64,000 nucleotides of DNA from Ruditapes philippinarum. Taxonomy: Eukaryota. Within the stretch, counting starts at the first letter, position 1. Each line of letters starts with the position of its first letter. The notes below the pieces were generated by a model that saw only the letters and a program-made list of their open reading frames with translations, was not told the DNA's origin and did not search any database. The position numbers and the translations under genes are program-made. This document shows, piece by piece, positions 1 to 49,900 of the stretch. Where the stretch lies: positions 1 to 64,000 of the forward strand of contig NW_026860937.1 of the NCBI RefSeq assembly GCF_026571515.1, in the 5' to 3' direction.

Positions 1-223
1 TCAAACGGGATCGGCCATATTGATTTTATTAAAAGTTAAACAGGGAATAATTTTTTCACGATGTCATAACATGTTTATTGAAGAGATATTTTCCAATAAA
101 ATTTGTTTAAAATAAATAGCTGGTATGCATTACGAGAGCTAAAATGAAAGTTAAATTTGGATGTTACTGTAACGCTTTGAAATTAGGATCAAACACAGGT
201 CAAGAGGCTAAGCAAGAAGTTAC

Positions 224-695
224 CTTCCACTTCAACTATCTTTCCAGCATTCTTCAATGCCCTGACAGCCTCGTCATGTGTGGCGTTGCAAAGATCTTCG
301 CCATTTACTGCAAGAATTGCATCACCAACATACAACTGTCCAGTTTTATCAGCAGCCATGCCTTTAAATATCTTACTGATCAAAATTGGCATTTTATTCT
401 CTCTTCCACCTTTAATACTTATACCAAGGCCATATGTTTCCTCTTTGATAACTTTGACAACTCGCTTTTGGCCAGGAATATTGTCAGGTACATGAGCGGC
501 TTCTTGGGTATTTGATGGGACGTTACTGGACTGAGCTGATATATCGTTGTTTGTGGAAGATGTGGACATATTTTCAGGAGGTTCGTCAAGGGATAAAGTT
601 AATGATTCATCATTTAACGTCACTGTCACTTTACACCATTGCTGGCGTATATAAACTTCGAAATGCCCCGTCCGACCAGATATGTTGGTCGCCAT
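224..695 (-). CDS. SNTB1: Syntrophin (beta-1/alpha-like), first coding exon: N-terminal half of split PH domain plus PDZ domain; gene continues beyond the left edge
   Basis: Translation has [47 protein letters not shown]...[15 protein letters not shown], the syntrophin PDZ. ATG at 695 in AAAATGGCG context. Phase-1 donor G|GTAAC after 224, so the ORF tail to 189 is intron. Paralog assignment is tentative. Confidence 0.9.
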
Positions 696-22139: not shown

Positions 22140-22222
22140 GTGATCAAGTTAAACGAGATTTGACGTCGTGATTTATTTATTCACGACGACATTGTCATTG
22201 ACGCCAAAGCACTAGCAAGGTA
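22140..22222 (+). pseudogene. Promoter/5' UTR-only fragment of the tandem gene family
   Basis: GTGATCAAGTTAAACGAGATTTGACGTCGTGATTT...CGACATTGTCATTGACGCCAAAGCACTAGCAA aligns with 27177-27270 and 35470-35563; no coding exon follows. Confidence 0.65.
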
Positions 22223-22877
22223 ATGTATTCAGATTAAAAGTTTAGATGAAATGTTCTGATTTCACAGGTAGGTAGCTTAGTAATGAAAACGTCACTTTCT
22301 ATCTGCATAGAATTCACATGTATGATGTTTATTATATTTCAACCGGTACACCATTTTTAACCCAAGTAACACATCCGACGAAGACTGAAATCAAACATGC
22401 CCTGGTAAAATACCTCTAGATCAAATCAATGCCGATTTCCACAAAATACAAAATGGACTATTTTGTATATTGTACCACGCTTCATCTTTATTCTATTCTT
22501 TATCTTAATACTATCTAAATATGTGACCACGCCCACTTTATTCCCGCTACCTGTCACTATCAACACGTGTCTGTGATGTATATAAATTAATAAAATAAAC
22601 AAATGGATAAATAAAATAATTGGTGCAGCATATAACTACTTTGACCAGGCATTGCGAGGGCAGGTGAATAGTAAAAAGCTGCATTATTTCTTGTAGGTCC
22701 CACTCGTTCGTACAAATGCCTGATTTTGCAATATCTGGGGTCTTTTCCTGTTTTGGCGCCATATGACATAAGTTGTGTTGGTACGCCATAAAACTAAACA
22801 CACAAATGCCCTGATGATTTTGCTTAAAATAAGCATGATATGAATACATCCCTTTTTATGTCATATTTGCCATATAC

Positions 22878-26608: not shown

Positions 26609-27171
26609 TTGAATGATTCAACTTTGGTGAATACAATTTATTTTCAAATACACGTTCTACATGTCCTGTCTTCTACATGCCATGTCGTGTTTCGGCACAG
26701 ATTTTTAAAAAAGATGGTGGAATATCACAAATTGTCACTAATTAATCAACGTGCACCAGTGCTGGCAAGTGTTTCGGAGGAAGCTAGGAAATTTCTTTAT
26801 AGAAATTCGTGTTCATTATGATAACTGTCCTTGTGATATACATTTGTCCTTAAGACATTTCCCTGTATGCGGAACTCTGGTCGTCCAATGTTATTCCTTA
26901 TAACAAAACATTTTACGAACGATGCTACATTTGTATTCTTACAAGACAGCTGTATCACTTGTTTCATTACATGTTTTCATTAAAGCCGTTGGTGAAAAAA
27001 AAATTTCACTGTAGAATAGACTGTGCGATTTGCGCGCAAAGTCAATCTAAACAGAACTTCCTAAAGATTGTGTGTTTAGTTATTGTGTGGATTTATTAAA
27101 AACATCTATATAAGCCATCTCCTTGATCTCGGAAACGGAAGTGATTGTATGAAACATTTATTTTAAAAAAA

Positions 27172-27323
27172 AAAACGTGATCACGTTAAACGAGATTTGA
27201 CGTCGTGATTTACGTATGACGTTGACGTTGTTTCTACGCGACATTGTCATTGACACCGAAGCAATAGCAAAGAGAATTTATTCACTTAGCAGTTTTCAGC
27301 GATATTTAACGATTTCGACAGTT
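27172..27323 (+). promoter_or_regulatory. CpG-rich promoter/5' UTR of paralog A with CRE-like TGACG sites
   Basis: Palindrome AACGTGATCACGTT, TGACGTCG and TGACGTTGACGT; the block is conserved in front of paralog B and the remnant copy. Confidence 0.55.
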
Positions 27324-30300
27324 ATGGAGGAAGTTTTTATACCGAAAATATCTATCCTGACCCAAGATGGAGGAATGTAAGTGAAAATTCCATTATTTCA
27401 CCATACATGCATTAGGTTAGTATGAAAAGAAACAAAAACTGAAGTGCTTAACAGATCTGGCTAAAGAGAAACAAACTTACAATTCCTGTGCAATCATATT
27501 ATCAGTATCAACAGGACAAAAATATCTTTGTTTCTATTTATTAGGTTAAATTGAATTCATTCATTCGTTCCCATGTTAATTCATCATTTTGCTTGTTTAT
27601 TTATGTATCTATTTTATTTATTTATTCATCTAGCCTTCCTTTTTTTTGAATTTATATATTTATTTTGTTATTAATTTATCAATTGATTTGTAAATTGCGG
27701 AGGAAGGGAGTCTAGTAACTCTCCAGGAAACGATGTTTTGTTAGGAAACAACTACCGGCCTATTATATATGAACTACAGGTACTGGGAAATTGGAATTAC
27801 GTATGTAATTTGAAACATTTTTTTTAACAAAATTTTTTTTACAATTTGTTAAAATGAACCATTACACTCATCTATATCTCAATATTCATTCTTAAGTAAT
27901 TAGTTTGATTAATCGCGACTATTAATTTATATCAATTTTCAAAACTCACCTTTATTTATTTAAAATTCCTTATTTATTAATTACAAGGTTTTTAATCTCC
28001 AGTCTTGACAAGCTCTTATCTGTTAATGTTAACATTTCCGAAAATACCGTTTTCCAATTACAGTTCCGAGTTTTCCAGGCAGTGAAAGTTAACAAGGTTT
28101 GTGATTTCTCTAAAAACGAAAAATTCTTTAAGTGCTTGAATATTTCACCTTCATGTATCTTTAAACGCAGTTCCTGTTCTTTTTTAGTTTTTTGCACTGT
28201 ATCATTTACGACTCGTTGAAATGAATTTCAAACTGTTGCAAAATTTAAAGATTGTCTCGAAGGTGTTCGTGCTCACAATAAATGGTACAGATTAATTTAG
28301 GTATTCACTATAACTTGGGAGTTTATTTTAGTGATTTCCCTTTTAAAAAACTACACTTTTGAGTGCAAGATTTTTTTATTTGCTTAAAAATTTTCTTTTT
28401 AAAACTATTTTTGAAATTTATATTTAATTTTTTTACCAATTTTTGGTTTTTTCCCCTGAGAAAACCCCCTAGTTTTTAAAAAAACGCAAAAAAAACGTTT
28501 GGGACACTTCATTTAAAAACATGAAACAGCCCTGCTTGCAAATTTAAAAAAGCCTTTGAATGGGAATTTTATCTTAACTAAAGGAAAAAGCTCTTTAAAA
28601 AAAAAACATTAAAACTTGATTTTAAAAAAGAAAAAAGGATCATTTTTTATATCATATTGAACTATAAATTTTTAAAAAAAATTAGTGTTTTTTAAATAAT
28701 TTTATCAATGATTTATTTTTACAAAACTTTTAAAGGTTTTCCCTTTGATTTATATAAAGTTTCTCTGATTTACAGAATTGTTGGAAGTCAAAGGCAAAGC
28801 TGCAAAAGTATGAGTTGATTTTAGAGACACAGAGATCTTCGTTACGTTACAACCAGAACGAGGCTAAAGTCAGAGAGGCAGCAATTGAGGTATGGGGCTT
28901 TTGATTGCTTTTATTGCCCATATTACTTACTAACAATTCTTGGACAGAAATTCCCAGTCAAAATTGTTGTGCCAGAGTTTTTGTTTGTTTTTTGTTGCTA
29001 TAATTATTATTGTTGATGTTGTTGTTGTTGTTGTTGTTAAAGCTGTGAACTGTTACTTACAATTATACATTTTCAGTTTTGGTGAATACCTTATATTGAA
29101 AAAAAATCAAATATACAATGTCATGCAGATTAAGATATCTATGTATAAGTTGCTATAGGTCAGTGGATAAACAATGTACAATAAATGATAGATACATCAA
29201 TTTGTACAAATACTGTGTTAATACATACTTGTTTCCATTCATATAATGGCATCTTGAAAAATACTGTTCACGAATTATAAGTTTTATATACATTATTAGA
29301 CCATAATGTTGGTTTATTTTTTACAGGATATGGAATTGGTACATAATAAATGGATGGTCAAGCACGAGAAAGACCATATTGCTTTTGAGAAAAAGTTCTT
29401 AGCTGAGATAAGTTTGCGAGAGAAAATTCAAAAGGTAGGTTATCGCATATCATACAGTTTTTATATAATAATATTAAAGGTACATTACATTGGTAGTACA
29501 ATTCAAGTGCGTGTTTTGGAAACTTTCGCGTCAACTTACACCATGTTTATATTGTACATACATATACTTCATATTAAAAATATTATAAATATTATTTATT
29601 ATTATTATCAATATTATTTAGAACTTTTTGTGTGTTTTTTTCTACGTTAAAGTCATATGAATAAATTATAAGCCGTCCAAACTACTGGCCATATTATTAT
29701 TATTATTATTATTTATTATTATTATTATTTTCAATATTATTTTCAATATCATAATTATTATTTTCTCCAATGTGTGGTCTACTGTCATAGCGGTTTTATA
29801 TCTTATTTTAAAGGATAGACTTTCACTTAATTGTACTTGCTTTGTAAATTACAGTTTGTAAATTGTATTGTAACATATCTATTTTACAGATGTCAAACGA
29901 CCTTGAACTTGATGTAGTTGAGATGCTTACTGATACAATCAGAACTTTGATGAACAAAAACAGACAAAATCTGAGGTACGTTATTTTCTTGATAATACAA
30001 TTTTTGGAAAAGAATAAATTGTTGGATATTTCTATGATACATGTAATTTTACCATGTTAAAATCTTTAGAACATTGTTAAAAAAATAATTCTGACCACAT
30101 TTTTGTAATTCTTTGACTGCAAGAAATTAACACAATATTCAGTATTTAAAAAAAGTGTTTTTTCCCAACAGTGATACAGAAGTAAACAAACTTGCCACAC
30201 AAGTATACAAACAAACATGCCGTACATACAAGTTTAGACATGCATCGGTAAGTATCTGCCCTTTTTTATGTAAGTTATAATTCCATTCGTTTATTTGATA

Positions 30301-31107
30301 TAATCATAATGTTTGTTATATCCAATTATTTAATTCAATATTGAATTTGAGAACTATGTGTAAAGCTATGACATGATTATAAGATAATCAAAAAGCGATT
30401 TATTTTGTCTAGTTGGTGCGCATGCTACGCACAATATCATTTATATTGGTTATAAGAAACCTTGGATAAAGCATTCAAAAACACATGGTCCCGGCAAGTT
30501 CGCAATAACCGAGGTTTACTGTAAATCGTATCGGCATATCTATTGTAGTATTTCAAAGTTATCACACACATAAAACAATGGTAAAACATGTGCGAATATC
30601 TTTCTTTTTTTTAAATTGGTAAACATTTATGTATTTCAGAACATACCATGTCAGAAAGAATGGATTGAGAAACCAGAATATGTAAACAACAGAATTAACA
30701 AGACTTAAAGAGAAAGGTTTGTTTGATTAATGATTAGGTTCCTTTTTGTATTCTCTCATTTAAAGATAAAGACAATTTGAACTTAGAAGAGTTTGGCTAT
30801 TTAAAAAAGAAATAAACATAAACTATAGTGGGCGTTTGAAACTGACAATGATATGAATGTCTGGATATTATAATGCGCATTTTATACGTAACACGGAGTC
30901 ATTCATTTATAACATGGAGTAGCTAAACTGTAACATGGAGTTTCGTATTATGTCGTAAGGAGACTTAAATATTCGGGCTATTATATTTTTTAAATACACA
31001 CTGTTTGCAGCTATACAGCAGTTTATATTTAGTAAAAGGTAATATAAAGTTCATAACGTAAACCATATTTTTTTCAGATCAAGACATCAAGTTTGGAAAG
31101 GGAATGA
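27324..31107 (+). CDS. Uncharacterised helical/coiled-coil protein, paralog A (8 exons; exon 2 garbled and early stop in exon 7 as assembled)
   Basis: Exons 27324-27376, ~28446-28562 (corrupted), 28776-28889, 29327-29434, 29890-29975, 30172-30247, 30640-30716, 31078-31107. Exon sizes and phases match paralog B except exon 7 (77 vs 81 nt, TAA at 30706-30708). Confidence 0.65.
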
Positions 31108-31565
31108 AAGGCTTCTTTTTCCCATTTGACATCATTGTGTTTTCATTTCAAATGGGTTTTTATTTGCTATTATTTTTTCCCATTTCATATGGGTTTTTAT
31201 TTGCTATTATTTTTTCCCATTCAAAATGGGTTTTTTTTTCGTGAAAAAAATCTAGTTAAATATATTTTAGATAACTAGAAAAAATGTGTTTGTATTTCTT
31301 TTTCGCCTATAGTAGTATCTGTTTCACAACAATTTTGATATTGAACTGGTTCATCAAAAAGATCTGTGTGCTTCGAACCAACCAGACAAAATGACAATGC
31401 CGATAACATTGACCAATATTACATTATCGACATCATTGTCCAAAAACCATCAGTTAGTAAATATAAGAACGGAAACAATGTTTATTCCGCTGATGATTAC
31501 GATAAAAAATCTGCAATTTTGCCATTAAAACATTTAGTAAATAAGTCCAATGTGTGGTATTATTA

Positions 31566-32095
31566 CGGTGGCACAAAGGTGACATGTATGCGTTTGTATT
31601 TATCTCGTGCGCACGAGATGTCGTGGCCACGAGTTACTAAGTCTTGGCCATGAGATAGTTAAGTCATGGGAACGAGATACTATGTCTTGGCCACGAGTTG
31701 CTAAGTCGTGGCCACGAGCTAATTAAGTCGTGGCCACGAGATACTATATGACGTGGCCACGAGATACTATGTCGCAGCCACGAGTTACTAAGTACATGTC
31801 TAGTTAATTAAGAAAACTCATATAAATAGTGTAATCTGATTGGTTATTTATCTCGTGCGCACGACTTAACTACCTCGTGGCCACGACATAGTATCTCATT
31901 CCCATGACTCAACCATCTCGTGGCCACGACTTAGTAACTCGTGGCCACGATATAGTAACTCGTGGCCACGATATAGTTTCTCGTTCCCACGACTTAACTA
32001 TCTTGTGTCCACGACTTAGTAACTCGTGGCCACCACATAGTATCTCGTGCGCACGAGATAAATGAAAACACACACATGTAACCTTTGTGCCACCG
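31566..32095. mobile_element. Foldback-type MITE with TA flanks and internal inverted 21-bp repeat arrays
   Basis: About 55-bp TIRs TA|CGGTGGCACAAAGGTGACATGT... / ...ACATGTAACCTTTGTGCCACCG|TA; palindromic CGTGGCCACG units arranged in two opposing arrays. Confidence 0.85.
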
Positions 32096-32710
32096 TATAT
32101 AATTGTTGCCTTGAGTGCGTTTTGAAACATCGCCGAATACTTGATAGAAAATTTCAAAATACGTGATCATATTAACTCCCTTGAATTATGAGAGATGGTT
32201 CTAAAGCTAGATGCACGCCCCACGATGACATAAAACAAACACACTTCCGCAAAATAATCCTCAATGAATGATGTATTGGTTCATAAGATAAGTTTTTTTC
32301 CGAATTTTGAACCCCTAAGTTCCCTTTTAATACCCAACATAGCCTTATTTGAATGTCTGTTAGAATACAAAGGAGAGGTGGTTTATGAAATGACTTTTAG
32401 AAACAAACAACAGGGTCGACCAGGAGGCGATGTTACTTTACAATAATAACGTCTGTCGACATGTTTAAGACTTATGTGTTTGAACGAAACCTTGAATTAC
32501 TTATAGTCTCAGATGAAACGTTTTAATCTAATAATTGAATAAATAGAGACAAAGATTTTGGTGTTATGTTTCATATTAAACTGGGAATTTAATTGAAACG
32601 GTTGATTCTAATTCCCTTTTTTTTACAAAAATATTTTGAGAGAAAACAATCATTTATTCTTTGACGCGGCTAAAATGTAACTCTTACATTTAGCGCGTCT
32701 AAACGCTATA

Positions 32711-35021
32711 TTTGTGCTATGTCAGTAATGTTGACTATGTGAGTGATACTGTGCAGTAATATTGATTATGTGAGTGGTGCTATGTTGTTATGTTGACTAT
32801 GTGAGTGTACCTGTGGAGTAATGTTGACTATGTGAGTGTAGCTGTTGAAAAATGTTGACTATGTGAGTGTTGCTGTTGAGAAATGTTGACTATGTGAGTG
32901 GTGCAGTGGAGTTATGTTGACTGAATGAGTAATATTATATGAGTAATGTTGAATATTTGAGTAGTGTTGACTATATGAATATAGTGCTGTGAAGTAATGC
33001 CGACTATGTGAGTGGTGCTTTGGAGTAATGATGACTTTGTGAGTAGCGTTATGTGAGTAATGTTGACTTTGGAGTTATGTTGATTATGTAAGTGGTGCAG
33101 AAAAATGATGTTAGCTATGTGAGTAATGCTGTGGAGTTATGTTGACTACGTGCGTGTTTCTATGGAGTAATGTTGACTATGTGAGTGGTGCTTCGGAGTA
33201 ATGTTGACTATTTGAGTGTAGCTTTCGAGTAATTTTGACTATGTGAGTGGTACTGTTTAGAAATGTTGACTATGTGACTGCCAGTGAGTAATATTGACTG
33301 TGTGAGTAGTGCAGTGGAGTTATGTTTACTATGTGAGTGTTGCTTTTGAGTATTATTGACTATGTGAGTGTTGCTTTTGAGTAATGTTAAATGTGTTAGA
33401 AGTGTAATGTGAGTAATCTTGACTATATAAGTGGTGCTCTGTGGGTAATTTTGACTGTGTGAGTGGTGCAGTGGAGTAATGTTGACTTTGTGAGTGCTTT
33501 TGAGTAATGTTGACTATGTGGGTGGTACTGTGGAGTAATGTTGAATGTGTGGGTAGTGTTATGTGAGTAATGTTGACAATGTGAGGGGTGCTATGGAGCA
33601 ATGTTGACTATGTGAGTGGTGCTATGGAGTAATGTTGACTATGCGAGTGTTGCTTTTGAGTATTGTTTCTATGTGAGTGGTACTGTGAAGTAATATTGAA
33701 AGTGTGAGTAGTGTTATGTGAGTAATGTTGACTATGTTAGTGGTGATCCGTGAGTAATGTTGCCTTTGTGAGTGGTGCAGAGGAGTGATGTTGACTATGT
33801 GAGTGTTTCTGTGGAATAATGTTGAATATGTAGGTGGTGCTTTTGAGTAATGTTGAATGTTTGAGTGTTGTTATGTGAGTAATGTTGACTATGTGAGTGG
33901 TTCTTTTTAAGTGAGTGATGTAGTGGAGTAATGTTGACTATTTGAGTGGTGCTGTGGAGTAATGTTGACTATGTGAGTGTTGTTATGTGAGTAATGTTGA
34001 CTATGTGAGTACCGTTATGTGAGTAATGTTGACTATATAAGTGGTGCAGTGAAACAATGTTAACTACTAGTATGTTATTGATGTTGTGGATTAATGTTGA
34101 CTACGTGAGTGGTGCTATGGAGTTATGTTGACTATGTGTGACTGCCAGTGAGTAATATTGACTGTGTGAGTAGTGCAGTGGAGTTATGTTTACTATGTGA
34201 GTGTTGCTTTTGAGTATTATTGACTATGTGAGTGTTGCTTTTGAGTAATGTTAAATGTGTTAGAAGTGTAATGTGAGTAATCTTGACTATATAAGTGGTG
34301 CTCTGTGGGTAATTTTGACTGTGTGAGTGGTGCAGTGGAGTAATGTTGACTTTGTGAGTGCTTTTGAGTAATGTTGACTATGTGGGTGGTACTGTGGAGT
34401 AATGTTGAATGTGTGGGTAGTGTTATGTGAGTAATGTTGACAATGTGAGGGGTGCTATGGAGCAATGTTGACTATGTGAGTGGTGCTATGGAGTAATGTT
34501 GACTATGCGAGTGTTGCTTTTTAGTATTGTTTCTATGTGAGTGGTACTGTGAAGTAATATTGAAAGTGTGAGTAGTGTTATGTGAGTAATGTTGACTATG
34601 TTAGTGGTGATCCGTGAGTAATGTTGCCTTTGTGAGTGGTGCAGAGGAGTGATGTTGACTATGTGAGTGTTTCTGTGGAATAATGTTGAATATGTAGGTG
34701 GTGCTTTTGAGTAATGTTGAATGTTTGAGTGTTGTTATGTGAGTAATGTTGACTATGTGAGTGGTTCTTTTTAAGTGAGTGATGTAGTGGAGTAATGTTG
34801 ACTATTTGAGTGGTGCTGTGGAGTAATGTTGACTATGTGAGTGTTGTTATGTGAGTAATGTTGACTATGTGAGTACCGTTATGTGAGTAATGTTGACTAT
34901 ATAAGTGGTGCAGTGAAACAATGTTAACTACTAGTATGTTATTGATGTTGTGGATTAATGTTGACTACGTGAGTGGTGCTATGGAGTTATGTTGACTATG
35001 TGAGTGGTGCTGTGGAGTAAT
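32711..35021. repeat. ~30-bp minisatellite with an internal 864-bp near-perfect duplication
   Basis: GAGTAATGTTGACTATGTGAGTGGTGCTGTG-like units; identical ORF translations at 33353 and 34217 give the 864-bp offset. Confidence 0.9.
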
Positions 35022-35465
35022 TGTAATCTTGTGCCTAAACGTTTTATACCAGTCCTTGCCGGAGGGGTTACAATATAGACAACATTACACAAACAATGAA
35101 AAATACCGGAAATAGCATTATAATACTAAATACAATCAAAATTTAAATATTGCCAATAGCTTGTTAAAAGGATTCACGCCAATTCAACCTGTTTCCTTTA
35201 AGAAAAAAAATCTTGCGTATAGCTGAAATAATGGTAAAAAACAAAATCAAAATCATTATTAGCATTCGTTGTTTTTCACAGATTATATCATGCACATGCT
35301 CTAGGTCTTAAGCCTTCATGTATTATACTGTGACGTCTACTTTAATGCCGCATCAGACGAAATCATTTTTTTGAAAATCGATGTTTCATCACATTATAAA
35401 CCATCTTTTAAATATAGAAAGCGGAATTGGATGCATAAAACAGTAAAAAAAACAAAAAAACAAAA

Positions 35466-35617
35466 AAACGTGATCACGTGAAACGAGATTTGACGTCGTG
35501 ATTTCCACATGACGCTGACGTCGTTTCTACGCGACATTGTCATTTACGCCACAGCAATAGCAAAGCGAATTTATTCACTTAGCAGTTTTCAGCGATATTT
35601 AACGATTATCGACAGTT
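35466..35617 (+). promoter_or_regulatory. CpG-rich promoter/5' UTR of paralog B with CRE-like sites and an E-box
   Basis: CACGTG, TGACGTCG twice and TGACGC; homologous to 27172-27323. Confidence 0.55.
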
Positions 35618-38600
35618 ATGGAGGAAGTTTTTATACCGAAAATATCTATGCTGACCCAAGATGGAGGAATGTAAGTGAAATTTCAATTTTAATTCACCAT
35701 AGGTTCGTAATAAAAGAAAGAAAGAAATCTCAAGTGCAAATAGATCTGGCATAAGATAAACAAACTAACAATTCCTGTGCAATCATATCATCAAGCCACA
35801 AATATCTATGTATCTATTGATTAGGTTTTAATTTATTTCATTCATTAGTCATCCTTTTTCATTTATTTATTTATTTATTACAGATTTTCCAGTCTTAACA
35901 GTTTATCTGTATTTACCGGATACGTTCCCATTACAGTTCCGATTTTCCAGGCAGTGAAAGTTAAGCAAGGTTTGTGATTTTCTTAAATGAAGAATATTTT
36001 AAGTGCTTAGAATAGTTCACCTTTATCATTAAACATGTCTTGTTTGTCGTTCCTTTTCGTTTAGTTTGAGTTCTTTTACGTTTAGTTTTATCTTATCATT
36101 TTCGTCTTGTTAGAAAACTTCTCAATTTTTTTTTTTTTTCTTTCTAAATCAGTAATCAAACCATTATGAACTGCAGATTATTAAAACAAGAAAATTTCTT
36201 CTGTGTTGTGAAGTGAACCCACGAACGGCCTTAAAATTAAGATACACTGTGCTTATTTTCAACACCCGTCATTTCAATTTGCTTTTGTCTACAGATATAT
36301 ATTATTTCGGCGTGCATCGTTTCTACTTAGGCTTCTTTTGTATACTTCTTTCTAAGTTCTTTCTTACTTCTTTTTATTGTTTCTATCTTTTTCTTTCTAT
36401 CTGTCTCTTTCTCTAGAAAACAGACTAACCACTTTCCTGCGAACATTGAGAAACTCTGTTCTGAAATATTCTAGACAAGATTATGATATCATTAGTACTG
36501 ATGAAGATTTTGATACACTGTAAGATTTTACAACATAACATAAAGTTTATTCTTGTGACATAGGCATTCGGTCCAAAATACAAAACAGTGCAACAAATAT
36601 AAAAATGCAATGAAAATACAATGTAAAATTATATGTATTAATAATAACCTGTTTTTCAGTGGGTATAAAAAACAACATATTTTTCATGTGCTCGCAAAAT
36701 ATGATAAAAATTAAATTGTATAGCTGCAATAAACGATCGTTGTTAAAATGTCTGAGGTGTTTGTGGTCACAATAAATGATACAAATTGAATTACGTTTAT
36801 ACTATAACTTGCAGTAAGTGATACATTTTAGTACTTCTTATTGATTTATATTAACATTTTTGTCTGCCAATATAGGTTTTCCTCTGAGACACACCTAGTT
36901 TTAAAAGAACGCAAAAGAACGCTGGTACACTTCATTAAGAAACATGAAACAGCCCTGCTTGCATTGAGAGAAGCTAGAATGGTAAGTTTTATCTTTACTA
37001 AGGAACGCTCTAAAAAACAAAACATTGCAACGTGATTATACCATTCATATCATATTTGAATAGTTAATTTAGAAATCAGTATAATCATGTTAATATACCA
37101 TAGTTTGTAAATTAATTGATTTCTTATTTGCAAAGCTATGAACAAAATATCAGTTTTTAATTGTATTCTGTTGCATGGTATTGTATTTTAATATAATTGA
37201 TTAATGCATCATTTTACAAAACACTAATGTTCATTGATACCGGCACTATTACGTGTTACGTGTTAAGAATTGAGTACCGCTCAAGCCGGTGATAAGGGGC
37301 GTGAGAGATGTTGCACTTATTCAGTATTCCTCATGTACAGACTCAATCAAACCGAGTCTGCAATTCTTATGTAATTTTGTTGTGATTAATGCTTCCGAGG
37401 GATCACTTTCTTTCCAGATTTTTATACTTCACAACAGCAGGTGTCAAGTGCTGTGTGGCAGCTGTAAAAAGTTGCCCCGTACTTCACTTCAGTGTTGTTA
37501 TATTTTTCTGGTCCTTCGGGATCATTGATACCGGCACTATTACGTGTTACGTGTTAAGAATTGAGTACCGCTCAAACCGGTGCTAGGGGGCGTGAGGGAT
37601 GTTGCACTTATTCAGTATTCATGTACAGACTCAATCAAACCGAGTCTGCAATTCTTATGTAATTTTGTTGTGATTAATGCTTCCGAGGGATCACTTTCTT
37701 TCCAGATTCTTAGATTTATATAAAATATCCTTGATTTTCAGAATTGTTGGAAGTCAAAGGCAAAACTGCAAAAGTATGAGTTGATTTTAGAGACACGGAG
37801 ATCTTCGTTACGTTACAACCAGAACGAGGCTAAAGTAAGAGAGGCAGCAATTGAGGTATGGGGCTTTTGACTGCTTTTATTGCCCATATTACTGACTATA
37901 AAGATAAAATCTTTTAACAATTCTTGAACAGAAATTCCATGTCAAAACAGTTGTGCAAGAGTTTTTGTTTGTTTGTTGTTGTTATTATTTTTGTTGCTGT
38001 TGTTGTTGTTGATGTTGTTAAAGCTGTGAACTGTTTTCATTTACTTTTACAATGATACATTTTCATTTTTGATGAATACCTTATATGGAAAAAAATCACA
38101 AATATACATGCAGATTAAGATATATATGTATAAGTTGCTATACGTAAATGGATAAACAATGTACAATAAATGATAGATACATCAATTTGTACAAATTCTG
38201 TGTTAATACATACTTGTTTTCATTCATATAATGGCATCTTGAAAAATACAGTTCACGAATTATAAGTTTTATTTACATTATTAGACCATAATGTTGGTTT
38301 ATTTTTACAGGATATGGAATTGGTACATAATAAATGGATGGTCAAGCACGAGAAAGACCATATTGCTTTTGAGAAAAAGTTCTTAGCTGAGATAAGTTTG
38401 CGAGAGAAAATTCAAAAGGTAGGTTATCGCATATCATACAGTTTTTATATAATAATATTAAAGGTACATTACATTGGTAGTACAATTCAAGTGCGTGTTT
38501 TGGAAACTTTCGCGTCAACTTACACCATGTTTATATTGTACAAACATATACTTCATATTAAAAATATTATAAATATTATTTATTATTATTATCAATATTA

Positions 38601-40196
38601 TTTAGAACTTTTTGTGTGTTTTTTTTCTACGTTAAAGTCATATGAATAAATTTTAAGCCGTCCAAACTACTGGCCATATTATTATTATTATTTATTATCA
38701 TTATTATTTTCAATATTATTTTCAATATCATAATTATTATTTTCTCCAATGTGTGGTCTACTGTCATAGCGGTTTTATATCTTATTTTAAAGGATAGACT
38801 TTCACTTAATTGTACTTGCTTTGTAAATTACAGTTTGTAAATTGTATTGTAACATATCTTTTTTACAGATGTCAAACGACCTTGAACTTGATGTAGTTGA
38901 GATGCTTACTGATACAATCAGAACTTTGATGAACAAAAACAGACAAAATCTGAGGTAAGCTATTTTCTTGATAAAACAATTTATTTGGAAAAGAAAAAAC
39001 TTTGTTGTATATTTTTTATATACATAAGATGATTAAACCTTTTAAACAATACACTGAACACAATATTGAATTGATTGATTGATTGATTGATTGATTGATC
39101 CATTTATTTACTCATTAGTCAATCATGACATGTTTTATTTTGGTCGTTGTTTCATGCACTTCTTACTGTTTCGCCATTGACCATTGACCTTTTTTGTAAT
39201 TCTTTGACTGCAAGAAATGTACATTTTATTCATTATTGAAAGACAATGTGTTTTTTTTTTTCTAACAGTGATACAGAAGTAAACAAACTTGCCACACAAG
39301 TATACAAACAAACATGCCGTACATACAAGTTTAGACATGCATCGGTAAGAATCTGTTCTTTCTTTCTTTTTGTTTTGTTTTTATGTAAGTTATAATTCCA
39401 TACTTTTATTTTCATATATGATTTTTGCTATATCGCTTATTTAGCCGGACATTAAATTTGAAAACTATGACATGATTATAAGATAATCAAAAAGTGATTA
39501 TTTTTGTTGAGTTGATGCGCATGCTACGCACAATATTTATCACTAAAATTGGTTATAAGAAACACCTCGGATATAGCATTCACAAACACAAGGTCCCGGC
39601 AGGTTCTCTATAACCGAGGTGTACTGTAAACAGTATTGAAGCATTTTAAAATTATCACACACATAAAATGAAGAAAAATGTAAAAAATGTGAGAATATCT
39701 CATTTTAATTGACAAACATTTATGTATTTCAGAACATACCATGTGAGAAAGAATGGATTGAGAAGCCTGAATATGTTAACACCAGAATTAACAAACAAGA
39801 TATTAAGCCAAAGGTTTGTTTGATTATTAACTAAGATTTCTATCTTTAATTTTTCATTTAAACTATAAAGAAATTTTGACCGAAAAAGATTTTGGCTAAC
39901 TGCCGCTATTTAAAAATAAAAAAATAAACAAAGACATACGTAAATTCGTTTGAAACTTGCAATTATGCACTTGTTATTTTTATAATGCGAACTTTATAAA
40001 TAACACGGAGTCAACCGACTATATCATGGAGTAGCTAGACTGTAACATGGAGTTTCGTATTTTACCATAGGGAGTTCTTTATTCTTTAAATACTGTTTAC
40101 AGCTATATATAAATAGTAAAATTTGATATAAACTTCATAACGCAAACCATATTTTATTTTTTTCAGATCAAGACACCAAGTTTGGAAATGGACTGA
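35618..40196 (+). CDS. Uncharacterised helical/coiled-coil protein, paralog B, intact, 8 exons, 217 aa
   Basis: Exons 35618-35670, 36876-36981, 37742-37855, 38311-38418, 38869-38954, 39269-39344, 39733-39813, 40167-40196; all GT-AG, 654 nt open frame: [217 protein letters not shown]. Confidence 0.85.
37231..37708. repeat. ~291-bp tandem duplication (1.6 copies) in paralog B intron 2
   Basis: TCATTGATACCGGCACTATTACGTG starts at 37231 and 37522; absent from the short intron 2 of paralog A. Confidence 0.8.
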
Positions 40197-41620
40197 AAAG
40201 CTCCTTCGTTTTTTCCCATTTGACATCATTGTTTTTCATTTCAAATGGGTTTTTATTTGTTATTTTTCCCATTTCATATGGGGTTTTTATTTGTTATTTT
40301 TTCCCCATTTGAAATGGGTATTTTTTACGAATCAAAGAAGAAAATCGAAATATCTAGTTAAATATATTTTAGATAACTAGAAAATATGTGTTTGTAATTT
40401 TCTTTTTCTCCTATCCCCGTTTCTTAATTCTGTTAAAATTGTTTCAATTTTTATATTTGTTGACGGATTTGATTCATACGGGAACAAAACAAAAATTCAA
40501 TACCAGTGACCACAAACCAACAAGTTAATTAATTCAAATATGACATTGGCCTTTAAATAACCTTGGCCGTCTAGGTGAAATTATTGAGAGTTGCTTAAAA
40601 ATCGGAAAAAAACTCATACCTCTCTTATTTATTTACTGATTTAATTTATTCTTGGATAAAACGACATTTATGACACAACCGACATGATAAATAATTTTGC
40701 TATGAATTGACCTGAAATGACCTTGAGGGTCATGGTCAACGTACATCGTGTATTGAATTTTGCTTAAATTGTGATAGCTTTGCTATTAATTTACAGACAA
40801 TATTCATAATATTGGACTAAATGACAGCCATATCATAACTGACATATTGAATAATTCAAATATGACTGACATTAAAAGTTTAAACATAAAAGTGACCTTG
40901 ATGTCCATGGTTAAGTTGTTGAATTTTACTCAAATAACTAGTGATGTTCCGATTGTCGCAAGTCGCCGATTATCACTTACTGTTATGTAAAACGACAATA
41001 ATCGATTCACAAAAGTTTGTTCCGCGACGTCGTGAAAAATGTTTTAATTATCAAAGGGAATTTAATTCTGACGGTAATTTTCCTTTAGGAACACCTCGCG
41101 GATCGAAAAAAATCACTCAGAGACAATTTGGAGTTGAACAGGATCAATAAGTGATGTAAAACAAAAGAAATATAATGTGATGAAAATGGTATTATTTGAT
41201 ATCTATTGAAAAATAAAATCTATTTCGTAAAATTATGACTTTATAAGGTTAAAACTGTGTTGAAAAGTGCTAAATGAAGTTCATGTTATTAAATATAATC
41301 AAGTGCCTTGGTAAGAAATGTTACTTCCCTATTATTTTTTAACGCGACTTTATTCGAAAGTTATCAATTATGTCCCATCCGACTGAACCGATTATCGATT
41401 GGGACAAATTTCATCCGATTTCCATCACTACAAATAACTACCATAACTGTGTTAATAATGGACATTGGTTCATACATTGAAAAGCAACTCTAACAACTCT
41501 GTCTAATGACCGTGAACAAAAACATACAAAAATATTCAAGTATGGCTTTGATCTGTAAATTCATGTTAAATATTCAATTTTACACATTTGTTGTGCATTC
41601 TGATTTATATTACAAAAAAG

Positions 41621-42690
41621 TTATGTAATTTTGACTCTGTGTGTAAGTATGGTAATATAAGCCGTGTGAGAAGTGCTTTGTAAGAAATGTCAGCTGTGTG
41701 AAAATGCTCTGTGAGTCATGTCGACTGAGTAGTGCTCAGTGAGTAATATTAGCTGTGTGAGTAGTGAAAGCTGTGTGAATTATGTTTGTTAGCTGTGAGA
41801 GTTATGTCAGCCGAGTGAGTCATGTCAGATGTATGAGAAATGTCAGCTGTGTGAGTCATGTAAGCTCTATGAGAAATGTAAGCTGTGTGAGTGATGTAAG
41901 CTGTGTGAATAATGTTAGCAGTGTGAGTATTGTTAGCTGTGTCATGTAAGATGTGTTGAGTAATGTTAGCTGTGTGAGTAATGTTAGCTGTAATAGTAAT
42001 GTTAGCTGTGTGAGAGTGAGTAATGTTAGCTGAGTGAGTAATATTAGCTGTGTGAGTTATGTTAGCTGTATGAGTAATATTAGCTGTAAGAGTAATGTTA
42101 GCTGTAAGAGTAATGTTAGCTGTAAGAGTAATGTTAGCTGTAAGAGTAATGTTAGCTGTAAGAGTAATGTAAGCTGTAAGAGTAATGTTAGCTGTGTGAG
42201 TTATGTTAGCTGTGTGAGTTATGTTAGCTGTAAGAGTAATGTTAGCTGTAAGAGTAATGTTAGCTGTAAGAGTAATGTTAGCTGTGTGAGTAGCGTCAGC
42301 TGTTTGCATGGGTAATTTACGCAGTGTAAAAATGCTCTATGAGTCCAAATGACTTTGAATATAGTGTTCTGTGAGTAATGATGACTGCTTTAGTAGAGCT
42401 CTGTGAGTAATGCTACCTGTGTGAGGAATGCTCTGTTAATCATGTAAACTGTGTAAGTAGAGCTATGTGAGTTAAGTTCATTGTGTATGTGTGTAGTGTT
42501 CTGTGAGCAATGTTAGCTCTGCGTGTTGTGATGCGCTCTGGGAGTCCTGTTGACTTTCTTCATAATGCTCTGCGAGTTATATTGACTGTGAGTAATGATA
42601 GGTCTGTGTTGTGCTGCGCTTTCTGAGTAATGTTAGCTGTGTGTGTTGAGCTCTGGGTAATGCTGACTGTATGAGAAGTGCCATAAAAGT
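41621..42690. repeat. Minisatellite related to the 32.7-35.0 kb array, with an 18-bp homogenised core
   Basis: GAGTAATGTTAGCTGTAA/GT units at ~41960-42290 flanked by degenerate ~30-bp units; followed by the same TTACAATATAGACAACATTACA tag (42802, compare 35068). Confidence 0.85.
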
Positions 42691-46900: not shown

Positions 46901-49900
46901 CATCGGCGTAACAAATTATTTTAATATAGTAGCAGAAATGTTAAAGAATTACACAATATTAGAAATCTTCGACCAATCTGGAACTATTTTTTTCTTCTCT
47001 GAGAAGGTTTAAAAATTAATGAGCCTGTCATTTGACAATCTTTACAAAGTGATTTTTTCGGCGTTAGTGTACTTATCAAGGGAAGTAACCGCTTCGAGGA
47101 GCTCGTGACAGACTACTTACGAAGCTTGCAGTCTGAAATTTCGCTACCATTATTTGTTTGGTCCAAACGACGACCCAAACAAATAAAAATTGCTCATCTC
47201 CCGTAAAACATTAGTTAAAGGGGCTCCACTGCGGCTTTTTGACATAACGGGGCTGAAAAATATTGTTTTCCGAGATTTGTGTAGCAATTGATTTAGGTCT
47301 TATCCAATAACTTGTGTGCAAAATTTTAGCTCATTCCCTTATCTTGGCTGTGTTTCCAGAGTAATCATTTTATTGTAAAAACTAGCCCAAAAAGTCGGCT
47401 AATAATCGCATATAAAATTGATTTTCAATTTAATTCTAAATATATTTCTTTGTTATCCTTCGCAAATTTTACAATTTTAAGTGCATCACTTGATATTTAA
47501 TCATAAGTTTTTCATATTTATATTTTTAATGCCTTTATACCTCAGTGGAGTTCCTTTAATGACTGATTGTGTGTACTTGGCGAATATGTTATCAAATAAA
47601 TAAATAAATAAATAAATAAGTATGATCCTGTTAGTAATAAGTTACAATAAGAAATAAATAGAGTACATTGTATATATCTTTGTATTACCTTCCTTTTGGG
47701 CTTGCTTGTTTAAGATATGATTCTCGATTTGTAGATCCTCCAGTTTACCCTGAAATATAAATAGTAAATAATGTATGAAAAACATGACACCGACAGAACA
47801 AAAATACGTGCCGCAAAATATTATACACCAGTCATAATAGTATTATGCTTAAGCCAAAGGTCCTACTGGTTAGCGGCGTAACTTCAAGATGTCCATGTTT
47901 CCTCATATGACACAGACTGGTGAGTGGTTCCGGTGGACTACTTAATTGTAAGCTCTTCAAAATCGAACGTAAATAAAATACGGTTTAAAGTTTAAGGTAT
48001 TAGCACCCTAATGCATTACCTCCGCTTTGAAGAGTATTCAAATAGGCTAGAATTACTGTTAACTACATTGAAAATGAGGGCCATGGGTTCAATCCCCAGG
48101 TCAACTTTTTTTTTCTTTCTTTTTTTCTTTTAACATTATTTATGTATCTCTCATGTCCCATATGGAAAGAAAAAAGTGTTTAATTTTGAATTTTTAATTT
48201 ATATAGGTATTTATTGGCTAAATTATGCTAAATCTAGTAATAAATATGGTACCTGATATTTTCAAAAGATAATATAATCAAAACTAGACGGTAAAAGTTT
48301 TTTATATTTTACAAGATCAACCAATATCCTTTTTTAAAAATTTAGGGAAACTTTGAAAACAGGCACTCATTTGGGTAAATTTTAAGAATTTTTTGAATTA
48401 GGCTCCTAAAGTAGAAAAATGGTCAGACATGAGGTAAAAATGGGTGGGGCAGGGTAACATTTTTATACAGATTTCATAAATTTTAAGTAGAAACCATAAT
48501 TTTGCTTATGTGGATTGTTAGCTGAAGGGTACTATTTGTTTCGTACCAAAAATTCATGGGAAAACATTTTTCATTAGAATGTTATTGCAGATTATTTAAA
48601 GGTTCCTCATTTCTAAAAAAAGGGCCCTCATAACATCCTAGCTTGAGTTCAGAAAAGTGGCCATAACTTGATTTCCGTACGGTAAACTTTGTTTAAATTT
48701 TGCATACAGGTGTACTTTAAGGTATACATCTGACCTATGATGTCAATTCTTATTAGTTCCTGATAGTGCCCATTAGGGTCCTAATACCTTAAACTACAAT
48801 GTTTCTATGTTGGATAAACAAACAAAAAATCTGACAATTGTGTAAAATCTGCATTAATACTTTGGAAGACGTCTTACGTCTTGACTTCCTATCTACAACT
48901 AACAAAAAACCTTAATCAATTGTCATTGTAACTAAAATGTTATGTTCTAAAACTTTTATATCTTTCGTTCTAATCCATTTCATCATTGTATATATTGAAT
49001 GATTGTATATTATGTACTGTGTATGATTATGAATAAAATATGTTTAAACTAAAACTTCTGGTCAGCAGTTACCATAAAAATACTGTTGCTCAAATGTGAA
49101 ATTAAGGATACTTGTTTTCCAAATTCATGTTTGACTAGATTCTGCGTGACTCACGCAGATCTATATACAACTTTAGTTTAACGCGGCATCATCGATTGGA
49201 TCGGAACAAAAGCTCATTTTTTTATTTTTATTTTTTTTTTTTTTTTAGATTTAATTTTCAATTTTTGTATCCTATCTTTTATACTTGTTTTTTTTTTTCA
49301 TATAGGCATTAGGCAGTAAATTAAATAGCTAATAAAGTCTTCAAAAGAATGGTTATCAGGATCGCATTTAACGATATTTGACGACGCGTTTTACTCAAGA
49401 CATTGACGTCGTTACTAAGCCACGTTGTCGTTGCCGCCAAAGCATTAGCAGCAGAGATTATTCAATTAGCAGTTTACAGCGATATTTAACGATTTTATTC
49501 AGTTATGGAGGAAGAATATGTACCGAAAGTATTTATCCAGATAAAAGATGTAGGGTGAAGAAGTAAGTGAAATTTCAATTATTTCATCAGCTTTGTAAGA
49601 AAAGAGAAAAATCTTTAAACAAATCGCCTTATTTAGAGCCTCTTAAACTACATTACTTTCTGCATAATCCCTAATACTATGATAAATATATTAGATCTTA
49701 ATGAATTTTAAAAAGCCTTAAATTTAAGGGGGACAAAAATCACTTAAAGTGACTCCGCTGAGTTTCAAAAGCCTAAAATCATAACATTTGAATTTCTTAC
49801 ATAAATGAGCTGACTTTGAAATAAATTTAAAATCGTATTTTTATGCTCTTCGTCTTAACCCGATTTGAGTGAACAGCGTTTAAACGCTTTTCATTTTGGG

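What the first reader, a model, noticed from the sequence alone, without database searches (positions are those of the whole stretch)
27324..40196. Unrecognised 8-exon gene family in tandem expansion and decay, invisible in the ORF track
Seen: short exons (30-114 nt) splice into a 217-aa open frame in paralog B, with exon sizes, phases and splice sites kept in paralog A while most introns have diverged. A pseudogene (49.4-50.2 kb) and a promoter fragment (22.1 kb) show further copies. The protein is rich in E/K/L/R with almost no Pro or Gly in its core, so it is probably helical or coiled-coil; I recognise no domain. Inference: a lineage-restricted birth-and-death family, plausibly gametogenic given its promoter, 3' UTR and HSF5-like neighbour. 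This is the best candidate for an undescribed system here.
Basis: partly seen in the sequence, partly recalled or inferred. Interest (0 to 1): 0.8.

Follow-up and report, generated by a model that had tools for sequence, protein, structure and literature searches.

The report
Annotated clam coiled-coil orphan gene pair
This is a real but already annotated Manila clam gene for a 280-residue helical protein of unknown function, sitting beside a broken duplicate, and it belongs to a small gene family so far found only in bivalves.

Summary

**Copy B.** It is a 10-exon GT-AG gene at 35618-40196. Its 280-aa product is letter for letter RefSeq XP_060552699.1, "uncharacterized protein LOC132713977 isoform X2" of Ruditapes philippinarum. 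Both exons are conserved and under purifying selection.

**Copy A.** It is not intact. Exon 3 is missing, exon 4 has lost both splice sites and has stops in all three frames, and exon 9 lacks 4 nt. RefSeq gives it a 164-aa truncated model. RefSeq isoform X1 joins A's first exon to B's exons 2-10.

**The 49.4 kb "pseudogene".** It is only a 242-bp fragment covering the upstream block, exon 1 and the start of intron 1.

**The family.**
- At least ten loci in this assembly, each preceded by a 31-bp satellite in the five copies where I checked.
- Relatives in Mercenaria and two unionid mussels.
- No significant Pfam, PDB-sequence or fold match; the Atlas gave no usable hit.
- The predicted core is a long antiparallel helical hairpin.

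Overall this is an ordinary lineage-restricted orphan family of low to moderate interest.

The parts
35458..35617 (+). Copy B conserved upstream block (core promoter and/or 5' UTR). It holds a CACGTG palindrome and TGACGTCG-like motifs. An upstream ATG at 35509 is out of frame with the main ATG.
   Evidence: About 92% identical to copy A over 150 nt (D16). It is still alignable in the paralogs with 54% protein identity (L023/L024), with a shared core around ACGTTGACGTCGTTTCTA. The frame of the upstream ATG differs between copies, so it is not conserved coding sequence.
35618..35670 (+). Copy B exon 1 (53 nt, ATG at 35618)
   Evidence: The in-script translation of the 10 exons equals RefSeq XP_060552699.1 / P0009. 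The donor is GT.
35884..35969 (+).
   Evidence: Acceptor is ...ttattacag. The encoded stretch [29 protein letters not shown] is present in P0009. It is conserved in the paralogs and in Mercenaria.
36417..36519 (+).
   Evidence: AG/GT boundaries. 69% amino-acid identity in the divergent paralogs L023/L024. For exons 2+3, B against L020 shows 9.0 synonymous changes on 28.3 sites and 5.0 non-synonymous changes on 100.7 sites.
36876..36981 (+). Copy B exon 4 (106 nt)
   Evidence: The own-genome search with its peptide gave 12 matches.
37231..37712 (+). High-copy mobile repeat inside intron 4: two 191-194-nt units, 96% identical to each other
   Evidence: One search shows the two units. The own-genome DNA search gave 2702 first-look candidates, of which 40 were scored, yielding 61 matches. 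The element often occurs as pairs about 285 nt apart.
37742..37855 (+). Copy B exon 5 (114 nt; holds the conserved CWKSK motif)
   Evidence: A profile of this exon found P0001, P0002 and P0003 among 1.84 billion proteins.
38311..38418 (+). Copy B exon 6 (108 nt)
38869..38954 (+). Copy B exon 7 (86 nt)
39269..39344 (+). Copy B exon 8 (76 nt)
39733..39813 (+). Copy B exon 9 (81 nt; holds the NIPCxKxWIEKP motif)
40167..40414 (+). Copy B exon 10: the last 30 coding nt with the stop at 40194-40196, then the 3' UTR. The 3' UTR holds 2.4 copies of a 34-nt CCCATTTCA-ATGGG unit.
   Evidence: One search gives the stop and the 34-nt units. Homology between copies ends near 40414 in 7 loci: L015, L016, L018, L019, L020, L021, L022.
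27165..27376 (+). Copy A upstream block and exon 1. The main ATG is at 27324 and an in-frame upstream ATG at 27216. RefSeq isoform X1 uses 27216-27376 as the first coding exon of gene B.
   Evidence: Translating 27216-27376 plus B's exons 2-10 equals P0015 (XP_060552698.1, 316 aa). The donor after 27376 is GT.
28010..28540 (+). Copy A decayed 5' body: long exon 2 with indels, exon 3 absent, and an exon-4 remnant at 28449-28540 that lacks both splice sites. The stretch 28320-28740 is homopolymer-rich and could be poorly polished sequence.
   Evidence: The remnant has stops in all three frames, the acceptor AG is gone and the donor reads GG.
28221..30708 (+). Copy A truncated open model (RefSeq LOC132713986, 164 aa). 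It uses a new first exon 28221-28262, then exons 5-8 (28776-28889, 29327-29434, 29890-29975, 30172-30247), then exon 9 from 30640 to an early TAA at 30706-30708.
   Evidence: The in-script translation equals P0013. Exon 9 is 77 nt, not 81; the 4-nt loss is shared with L015.
32714..35021 (.). 31-bp satellite between A and B. Related satellite lies upstream of the other gene copies, so it is part of the duplicated unit.
   Evidence: One search reports 65.8 copies. One search finds the satellite upstream of exon 1 in L015, L016, L018 and L019.
41739..42303 (.). 18-bp satellite downstream of B that shares the GAGTAATGTT core with the 31-bp satellite
49370..49611 (+). Third copy, a fragment only: upstream block, exon 1 and the start of intron 1. 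It lies inside the HSF-type gene, which is on the opposite strand.
   Evidence: 76.2% identity over 248 nt. Exon 1 is 76% identical. No other exon was found in 40801-64000.
22140..22231 (+). Fragment of the upstream block
   Evidence: 75.2% identity over 109 nt to 35470-35577; aligned as F22.

Best explanation
**Shown: the genes.**
- The region holds two tandem copies of a protein-coding gene of the Manila clam Ruditapes philippinarum.
- Copy B (35618-40196) is intact, with ten GT-AG exons encoding 280 aa. It is RefSeq LOC132713977.
- Copy A (27.2-31.1 kb) has lost the function of exons 2-4 and ends early in exon 9. RefSeq models it as a 164-aa remnant.
- RefSeq also models A's upstream block and first exon as an alternative first exon of gene B (isoform X1).

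**Shown: the family.**
- The genes belong to a family of about ten or more loci in this assembly.
- There are 280-287-aa relatives in Mercenaria mercenaria and distant relatives in two unionid mussels.
- The family is under purifying selection.

**Inferred: how the array grows.** In the five copies where I checked, each copy is preceded by the same 31-bp satellite. The array therefore most likely grows and shrinks by unequal crossing-over and gene conversion between [satellite + gene] units.

**Inferred: the protein.**
- It has no signal for an enzyme domain.
- It has a low-confidence N-terminal 80 residues carrying a conserved short motif.
- It has a confident antiparallel two-helix hairpin (84-213) plus a third helix (220-234).
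- It has a conserved C-terminal NIPCxKxWIEKPxY motif.
- It most likely acts as a non-enzymatic coiled-coil scaffold or adaptor that works through protein-protein contacts. Its partners, cell type and process are unknown.

My confidence of 0.75 applies to the identity and anatomy. For the scaffold reading I put about 0.5, and for a germline role about 0.25.
For: - **Identity.** The script translation of the ten exons equals P0009 = XP_060552699.1. Isoform X1 and the copy-A model were reproduced from window coordinates.
- **Exon structure.** The same ten exon lengths and AG/GT sites occur in 5 of 10 copies examined (B, L016, L018, L019, L020). The frame is open in 4 of 10. The same exon boundaries occur in the 54%-identical paralog P0004 on L023.
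- **Selection.** dN/dS is 0.15-0.35 in 15 of 15 pairs.
- **Family size.** Own-genome searches gave 14 matches for exon 5, 12 for exon 4 and 14 for exon 6.
- **Distribution.** Hits come only from R. philippinarum, Mercenaria, Sinanodonta and Potamilus. Homology between the venerid and unionid proteins is supported by hhalign at 97.5% probability, E 8.1e-12, over 239 columns.
- **Fold.** AlphaFold2 gives pLDDT of about 80-93 per 10-residue block for residues about 91-230, with helices at 84-139, 143-213 and 220-234.
- **Satellite.** It lies upstream of L015, L016, L018 and L019 as well as B.
- **Indirect sign of expression.** Fourteen small runs guessed to be RNA, from 6 studies, hold 0.15-0.21 of the sampled words of 35400-40400. 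Holding just the spliced mRNA would give about 0.18.
Against: - The 14 runs are only guessed to be RNA, and no listed holder is on record as RNA.
- **Models are predictions.** RefSeq XP models are predictions, and I could not see their supporting evidence.
- **Copy counts may be inflated.** The HSF exon next door occurs twice at 99% identity, so some contigs are probably haplotigs. Contig C9893 carries a hybrid copy with a B-like 5' part and an A-like 3' part.
- **Some decay may be sequencing error.** The frameshifts in L015 (+2 nt, +2 nt) sit in or beside runs of A, and 28320-28740 in copy A is homopolymer-rich.
- **The structural model is weak outside the core.** It rests on only 9 sequences, with mean pLDDT 66.7 and pTM 0.56.
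- **The function claim has no test behind it.** Fold matches are generic helical hairpins, with best Z 9.3. That is below the roughly 13 the tool itself calls uninformative for long helices.
Confidence: 0.75

Rival explanations
1. The first reader's 8-exon, 217-aa product (exon 1 spliced directly to exon 4) is the real or main product, and exons 2 and 3 are not coding.
For: Skipping exons 2+3 removes 189 nt, which is 63 codons, so the frame is kept. The join is open in B, L016, L018 and L019. A minor exon-skipping isoform cannot be excluded without reads.
Against: Both RefSeq isoforms contain exons 2 and 3. Their amino-acid sequence is conserved in divergent paralogs, with exon 3 at 57-69%, and in Mercenaria. 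Changes in exons 2+3 are mostly synonymous. Homologs are 280-287 aa, not 217.
Confidence: 0.05
2. The family is a very diverged branch of an already named metazoan coiled-coil family, for example an axonemal, centrosomal or meiotic structural protein. The tools available here could not detect this.
For: Coiled-coil proteins lose detectable sequence similarity quickly. The unionid and venerid members share only about 20% identity. The only full-library HMMER search used a 38-position profile. The other three searches depend on shared 5-residue words. No AlphaFold DB of cellular proteins was available.
Against: No Pfam family reaches its cut-off in 9 of 9 members; the best E-value is 0.019. The best PDB sequence-profile hit has E 0.14. 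Foldseek found 0 PDB matches at E <= 0.001. VIA-align wide peaked at Z 9.3 on unrelated hairpins. The Atlas gave no usable hit in two searches.
Confidence: 0.2
3. The gene is cargo of, or encoded by, a mobile element, and its many copies reflect transposition.
For: There are many dispersed contigs with copies. The homology block has sharp ends, from about -160 nt to about 40414, in all copies. A high-copy repeat sits in intron 4.
Against: There is no transposase, reverse transcriptase or other TE domain and no viral fold match at E <= 0.001. Introns and ten-exon structure are kept. dN/dS is well below 1. Copies are linked by a shared flanking satellite, as in tandem arrays. Orthologs exist in other bivalve families. 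The intron-4 repeat is an insertion found in only some copies: B and the C9893 upstream copy.
Confidence: 0.04
4. Much of the apparent expansion and decay comes from a fragmented, haplotype-unresolved, partly unpolished assembly. The true haploid state would be fewer loci with fewer broken copies.
For: The assembly is 1.41 Gb in 15,874 contigs. The neighbouring HSF exon is present twice at 99%. C13605 and C15010 encode proteins 95% identical. The L015 frameshifts lie in or beside runs of A, and copy A has a homopolymer-rich stretch.
Against: A and B lie on one contig and differ by 8-24% outside the converted block. Synonymous divergence between B, L016, L018 and L019 is 0.08-0.13. The 4-nt loss in exon 9 is shared by two contigs. 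The TAA in exon 6 of L020 is a substitution. Mercenaria has three loci on three large scaffolds.
Confidence: 0.35

Closest known systems
RefSeq gene LOC132713977 (XP_060552699.1 isoform X2, XP_060552698.1 isoform X1) and LOC132713986 (XP_060552707.1) of Ruditapes philippinarum, all named 'uncharacterized protein'
   Same: They are identical. The ten-exon translation of copy B equals X2. A's first exon plus B's exons 2-10 equals X1, and the truncated copy-A model equals XP_060552707.1.
   Different: Nothing differs in sequence. The records carry no function or family name. A full-text search for six LOC ids of the family found 0 papers.
Mercenaria mercenaria LOC123554690, LOC123544216 and LOC123559049 (280-287 aa), with Sinanodonta woodiana KAL3889838.1 and Potamilus streckersoni CHS0354_008511
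   Same: They are colinear full-length homologs. Mercenaria shows 57-58% identity to P0002. The unionid proteins match at hhalign 97.5% probability, E 8.1e-12. They share the CW(K/R)(S/T)K...Y.L...T..S.L(R/K)(Y/F)N core.
   Different: The unionid proteins are only about 20% identical and lack the NIPCxKxWIEKP C-terminal motif in the alignment.
Generic antiparallel coiled-coil hairpins (FliJ/YscO type, p85 iSH2, dynein stalk) and BAR/F-BAR helices
   Same: The predicted core (residues 79-217) superposes on such hairpins at Z 8.2-9.3 and rmsd 3.5-6.8 A. Foldseek probability reaches 0.99 for p85 iSH2, but with E >= 0.095.
   Different: Sequence identity is 5-13%. The scores are below the tool's stated noise level for long helices. 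No Pfam match exists for any of these families. This is a shared arrangement, not evidence of kinship or function.

Membership tests
RefSeq LOC132713977 / LOC132713986 (the already annotated genes) | Encoded protein identical to the database protein and located on the same contig | tested here: met
   Equality tests returned True for P0009, P0015 and P0013. The longest contig for these entries is 220,912 bases, and all three lie on that contig.
Bivalve LOC132713977-like family (unnamed) | Full-length colinear homology, including the CWKSK...LRYN core | tested here: met
Bivalve LOC132713977-like family (unnamed) | Conserved ten-exon structure | tested here: met
   Met within R. philippinarum only: 5 of 10 close copies keep all exon lengths, and the distant paralog L023 keeps the same boundaries.
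Transposable-element or viral protein | Transposase, integrase, reverse-transcriptase or capsid-type domain, or a fold match to viral proteins | tested here: not met
   No such Pfam hit. BFVD gave 0 matches at E <= 0.001.
BAR / F-BAR domain | Pfam BAR-type match and a three-long-helix crescent fold standing above background | tested here: not met
   No Pfam BAR family appeared among 15 weak families. F-BAR chains score Z 8.2-9.2 with rmsd 5.6-6.8 A, within the noise for helical models. The third helix is only 15 residues long.
Spectrin repeat (Pfam PF25034 Spectrin_SYNE1) | Score at or above the Pfam gathering cut-off of 35 bits | tested here: not met
   2 of 9 members match weakly, with best E 0.019. 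P0003 scores 12.1 bits against a 35-bit cut-off.
Germline-specific (gametogenic) gene | Gonad-restricted spliced transcripts | not testable with these tools
Run tissues are coded.

The most novel reading that the evidence does not exclude
A heteroconch-bivalve-specific coiled-coil protein family is kept in satellite-flanked tandem arrays that turn over by unequal crossing-over. In these arrays, the promoter and first exon of a dead upstream copy are reused as an alternative promoter and first exon of the intact downstream gene (A exon 1 spliced over 8.5 kb to B exon 2). The family would be germline- or sperm-expressed, driven by the conserved CRE-like upstream block.
Probability: 0.2. Interest if true: 0.45.

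Novelty: new member of a known kind. Interest (0 to 1): 0.25.

Why it matters
Taken alone, it matters little. Taxon-restricted coiled-coil orphan families in tandem arrays are common in bivalve genomes, and this one is already present in RefSeq as uncharacterized LOC genes.

It is still useful in four ways:
- It defines a family, absent from Pfam, that spans venerid clams and unionid mussels. It has a clear signature (the CWKSK...LRYN hairpin core and the NIPCxKxWIEKP tail) that could seed a family model.
- It gives a compact example of birth and death in a satellite-linked array, including a predicted chimeric transcript that reuses a pseudogene's first exon.
- If expression proved germline-specific, it would add a candidate to bivalve reproductive biology.

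Tried and rejected
**Tried, with no useful result**
- Pfam on seven single-exon peptides gave nothing. The only hit was Anti-TRAP at E 0.28.
- Pfam on full-length database members gave only sub-threshold hits.
- The PDB sequence profile gave a best E of 0.14.
- The ESM Atlas, tried twice, gave no usable hit.
- Foldseek against PDB and BFVD gave 0 matches at E <= 0.001.
- VIA-align wide gave only generic hairpins.
- A search with the unionid protein alone found only the two unionid proteins.
- My first 10-exon model used a short 33-nt exon 2 and the second ATG, giving 248 aa. I rejected it when P0001 and P0009 showed the 86-nt exon 2 and the first ATG.
- I considered an RFX X-box reading of GTTTCTA(A/C)GCGAC in the upstream block. 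By recalled consensus it has 2-3 mismatches, so I dropped it. This was not tested.
- A regex hunt for exon 1 in the divergent loci printed nothing. I replaced it with tblastn using P0004.
- The family tree was poorly resolved, with 8 of 12 inner forks open. I use it only to show that the venerid and unionid groups separate.
- Two literature searches were run. Six LOC ids gave 0 papers. A four-term search listed 6 papers. I saw only the listing and the starts of the abstracts, and none concerns this family.
- Supplementary files were not consulted. Differential-expression tables of clam gonad transcriptomes could hold these LOC ids.
- Earlier findings of this scan do not cover this family.

**The joined model**
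I left out the step of searching my own joined translation. All full-length searches used database proteins that the tools had returned (P0002, P0009, P0005, P0017 and alignments of such proteins).

Full report
**What is in the sequence**

The window is AT-rich animal DNA with about 27-38% G+C. Direct-repeat analysis shows two copies of one unit, 8.3-9.1 kb apart. Copy A lies at about 27165-31297 and copy B at about 35458-40399. A third short piece lies at 49370-49611 and a 92-nt piece at 22140-22231.

Reading copy B, I first built ten GT-AG exons with a short exon 2 and the second ATG, giving 248 aa. That model is also open, at 654 nt or 217 aa.

**Which model is right**

Pfam on seven exon peptides gave nothing.

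The exon-5 peptide found 14 matches in the window's own 1.41-Gb, 15,874-contig assembly:
- 10 at 92% identity or more, two of them in the window;
- 3 at 61-63%;
- 1 at 37%.

Exon 4 found 12 matches and exon 6 found 14.

A 38-column profile of exon 5 from seven copies was scored by HMMER against 1,835,955,588 proteins. It found 3 at E <= 0.001: P0001, P0002 and P0003.

The cluster tables name two of these as RefSeq "uncharacterized protein" entries of Ruditapes philippinarum. The third is a hypothetical protein of the freshwater mussel Sinanodonta woodiana.

P0001 showed that exon 2 starts further upstream, at 35884 (86 nt), and that the first ATG is used.

Searching with the database protein P0002 returned P0009, which is 280 aa. 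My script translation of exons 35618-35670, 35884-35969, 36417-36519, 36876-36981, 37742-37855, 38311-38418, 38869-38954, 39269-39344, 39733-39813 and 40167-40196 equals P0009 exactly. P0009 is XP_060552699.1, LOC132713977 isoform X2.

So the gene has ten coding exons and 280 codons.

Independent support for those two exons:
- They are present with AG/GT boundaries in L015-L021.
- Exon 3 is 57-69% identical at the protein level in the distant paralogs L023, L024 and L025.
- Changes in exons 2+3 are mainly synonymous. For B against L020 there are 9.0 changes on 28.3 synonymous sites and 5.0 on 100.7 non-synonymous sites.
- The Mercenaria homologs carry them.

Skipping both exons keeps the frame (189 nt), so a minor isoform cannot be excluded.

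**Copy A and the other pieces**

Copy A keeps exon 1, exons 5-8 and exon 10 at the same sizes. The rest has decayed:
- Exon 3 is absent.
- Long exon 2 has indels.
- The exon-4 remnant (28449-28540, 85% identical with indels) has lost its AG acceptor and GT donor and has stops in all three frames.
- Exon 9 is 77 nt instead of 81, giving a TAA at 30706-30708.

RefSeq models copy A as LOC132713986, 164 aa. I reproduced this model from 28221-28262 plus exons 5-9.

RefSeq isoform X1 of gene B (316 aa) equals 27216-27376 of copy A spliced to B's exons 2-10. In the annotation, then, the dead copy's first exon serves as an alternative first exon of the live copy.

One caveat applies. The stretch 28320-28740 is unusually homopolymer-rich and may be poorly polished sequence.

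The block spanning exons 5-7 with their introns is 92.7% identical between A and B, with 300-nt stretches at 100%. The rest is 76-85% identical. This points to gene conversion or recombination.

The "pseudogene at 49.4-50.2 kb" is only the upstream block, exon 1 and the start of intron 1.

**The family**

I projected the exons onto ten close copies (B, A, L015-L022):
- 5 keep all ten exon lengths and splice sites.
- 4 are open throughout: B, L016, L018 and L019.
- L020 has a TAA in exon 6.
- L021 has lost one base in exon 9 and the end of exon 2.
- L015 has +2, +2 and -4 nt changes. The two insertions extend or create runs of A, so they may be sequencing errors.
- L017 lacks exons 7-10 in the fetched stretch.
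- L022 has only exons 5-7 and 10.

The distant paralog P0004 on L023 has the same exon boundaries. dN/dS is 0.15-0.35 in all 15 pairs of six copies.

The same 31-bp satellite that separates A from B lies upstream of exon 1 in L015, L016, L018 and L019. Homology ends near 40414 in the seven loci compared downstream. The repeated unit is therefore [satellite + upstream block + gene].

Contig C9893 carries a copy whose 5' part is B-like, including B's intron-4 repeat insertion, and whose 3' part is A-like. This is what unequal crossing-over would produce.

Counts are uncertain because the assembly holds haplotigs. The neighbouring HSF exon occurs twice at 99% identity.

**Relatives elsewhere**

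Database searches returned only bivalve proteins:
- P0002 as query: 7 proteins among 662 candidates.
- The family profile: 8 among 5,736.
- The unionid protein: 2 among 856.

The species are R. philippinarum, Mercenaria mercenaria (three loci, 280-287 aa), Sinanodonta woodiana and Potamilus streckersoni.

A venerid profile against a unionid profile gives hhalign probability 97.5%, E 8.1e-12, over 239 colinear columns. The family therefore predates the split of these lineages.

These searches are limited by word sharing, or, by a 38-position profile. Absence from other molluscs is not shown.

**The protein**

No Pfam family reaches its cut-off in any of the 9 members; the best E is 0.019. The best PDB sequence hit is E 0.14. 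The Atlas gave no usable hit.

AlphaFold2 was run on a 9-sequence alignment and gave mean pLDDT 66.7 and pTM 0.56. Residues about 91-230 are confident, with block means of about 80-93. The helices are at 84-139, 143-213 and 220-234. The first 80 and last 30 residues have low confidence.

Fold searches gave nothing specific:
- Foldseek against PDB and BFVD: 0 matches at E <= 0.001.
- VIA-align wide: best Z 9.3, on FliJ/YscO hairpins, dynein stalks and F-BAR helices. The tool itself calls this range uninformative for long helices.

I therefore read the protein as a non-enzymatic antiparallel coiled-coil scaffold or adaptor. This is an inference from shape and composition, not a tested function.

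**Expression and the gametogenic idea**

After that I kept that stretch out of every search.

Indirect evidence comes from the run search. Fourteen small runs of 76-166 million letters, guessed to be RNA, from six studies hold 0.15-0.21 of the sampled words of 35400-40400. DNA-like runs hold 0.53-0.61. If a run held only the spliced mRNA, the expected share would be about 0.18.

That is suggestive but not proof, and no listed holder is on record as RNA.

The upstream 160 nt are conserved even in the 54%-identical paralogs. They contain a CACGTG palindrome and TGACGTCG-like motifs. The neighbour on the minus strand has an HSF-type DNA-binding domain at E 4.7e-25. Neither fact was tested for a link to gametogenesis.

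**Novelty and verdict**

The genes are already modelled in RefSeq but unnamed. A full-text search for six LOC ids of the family found 0 papers. A four-term search listed 6 papers, none on this family, judged only from the listing and the starts of the abstracts. Supplements were closed.

This is one more taxon-restricted coiled-coil orphan family in a tandem, satellite-linked array: a new member of a known kind. Interest is low to moderate.

As a result, exon structures and neighbours in the other species were not compared.

Noticed in passing
window 37231-37712: A high-copy repeat sits in intron 4 of copy B, as two units of 191-194 nt that are 96% identical. The own-genome search gave 2702 first-look candidates, usually as pairs about 285 nt apart. 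It looks like a MITE- or SINE-type element with an internal duplication. The same insertion is present in contig C9893.
   Followed up: partly
window 23742-25699: A 145-bp satellite of about 11 copies at 85% matches lies between the upstream-block fragment at 22.1 kb and copy A.
   Followed up: no
window 31618-32060: Two adjacent arrays of a 21-bp unit (GTCGTGGCCACGAGATACTAA type) lie in opposite orientation, at 31620-31793 and 31849-32056. Together they form a large inverted structure just downstream of copy A. The same element is present after the L015 and L017 copies.
   Followed up: no
window 32714-35021 and 41739-42303: A 31-bp satellite contains an exact 864-bp-spaced duplication: 33273-33572 equals 34137-34436 at 100%. 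A related 18-bp satellite lies after copy B. Both give strong G-over-C skew.
   Followed up: partly
window 43901-51503, minus strand: A gene with an HSF-type DNA-binding domain has an exon at 51084-51503 (PF00447, E 4.7e-25). A 192-aa acidic ORF at 43901-44479 has no Pfam match, and whether it belongs to the same gene was not checked. The copy-C fragment of the family lies between them on the other strand. A 99% identical second copy of the HSF exon sits on contig C2049, probably a haplotig.
   Followed up: partly
window 28320-28740: A stretch in copy A is full of A/T/C homopolymer runs. It aligns to B's exon-4 region with many small insertions, which looks like unpolished long-read sequence rather than natural decay.
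   Followed up: partly
window 31144-31239 and 40237-40318: The 3' UTRs of both copies hold 2.4-2.6 copies of a 34-37-nt unit with a CCCATTTCA(A/T)ATGGG palindrome. The 3' UTR block is 80-88% conserved in seven other copies.
   Followed up: no
window 189-695 (minus strand) and 15948-16334 (plus strand): A PDZ-domain exon (PF00595, E 2.6e-19) and a HAUS4 exon (PF14735, E 1.1e-06) mark ordinary flanking genes.
   Followed up: no
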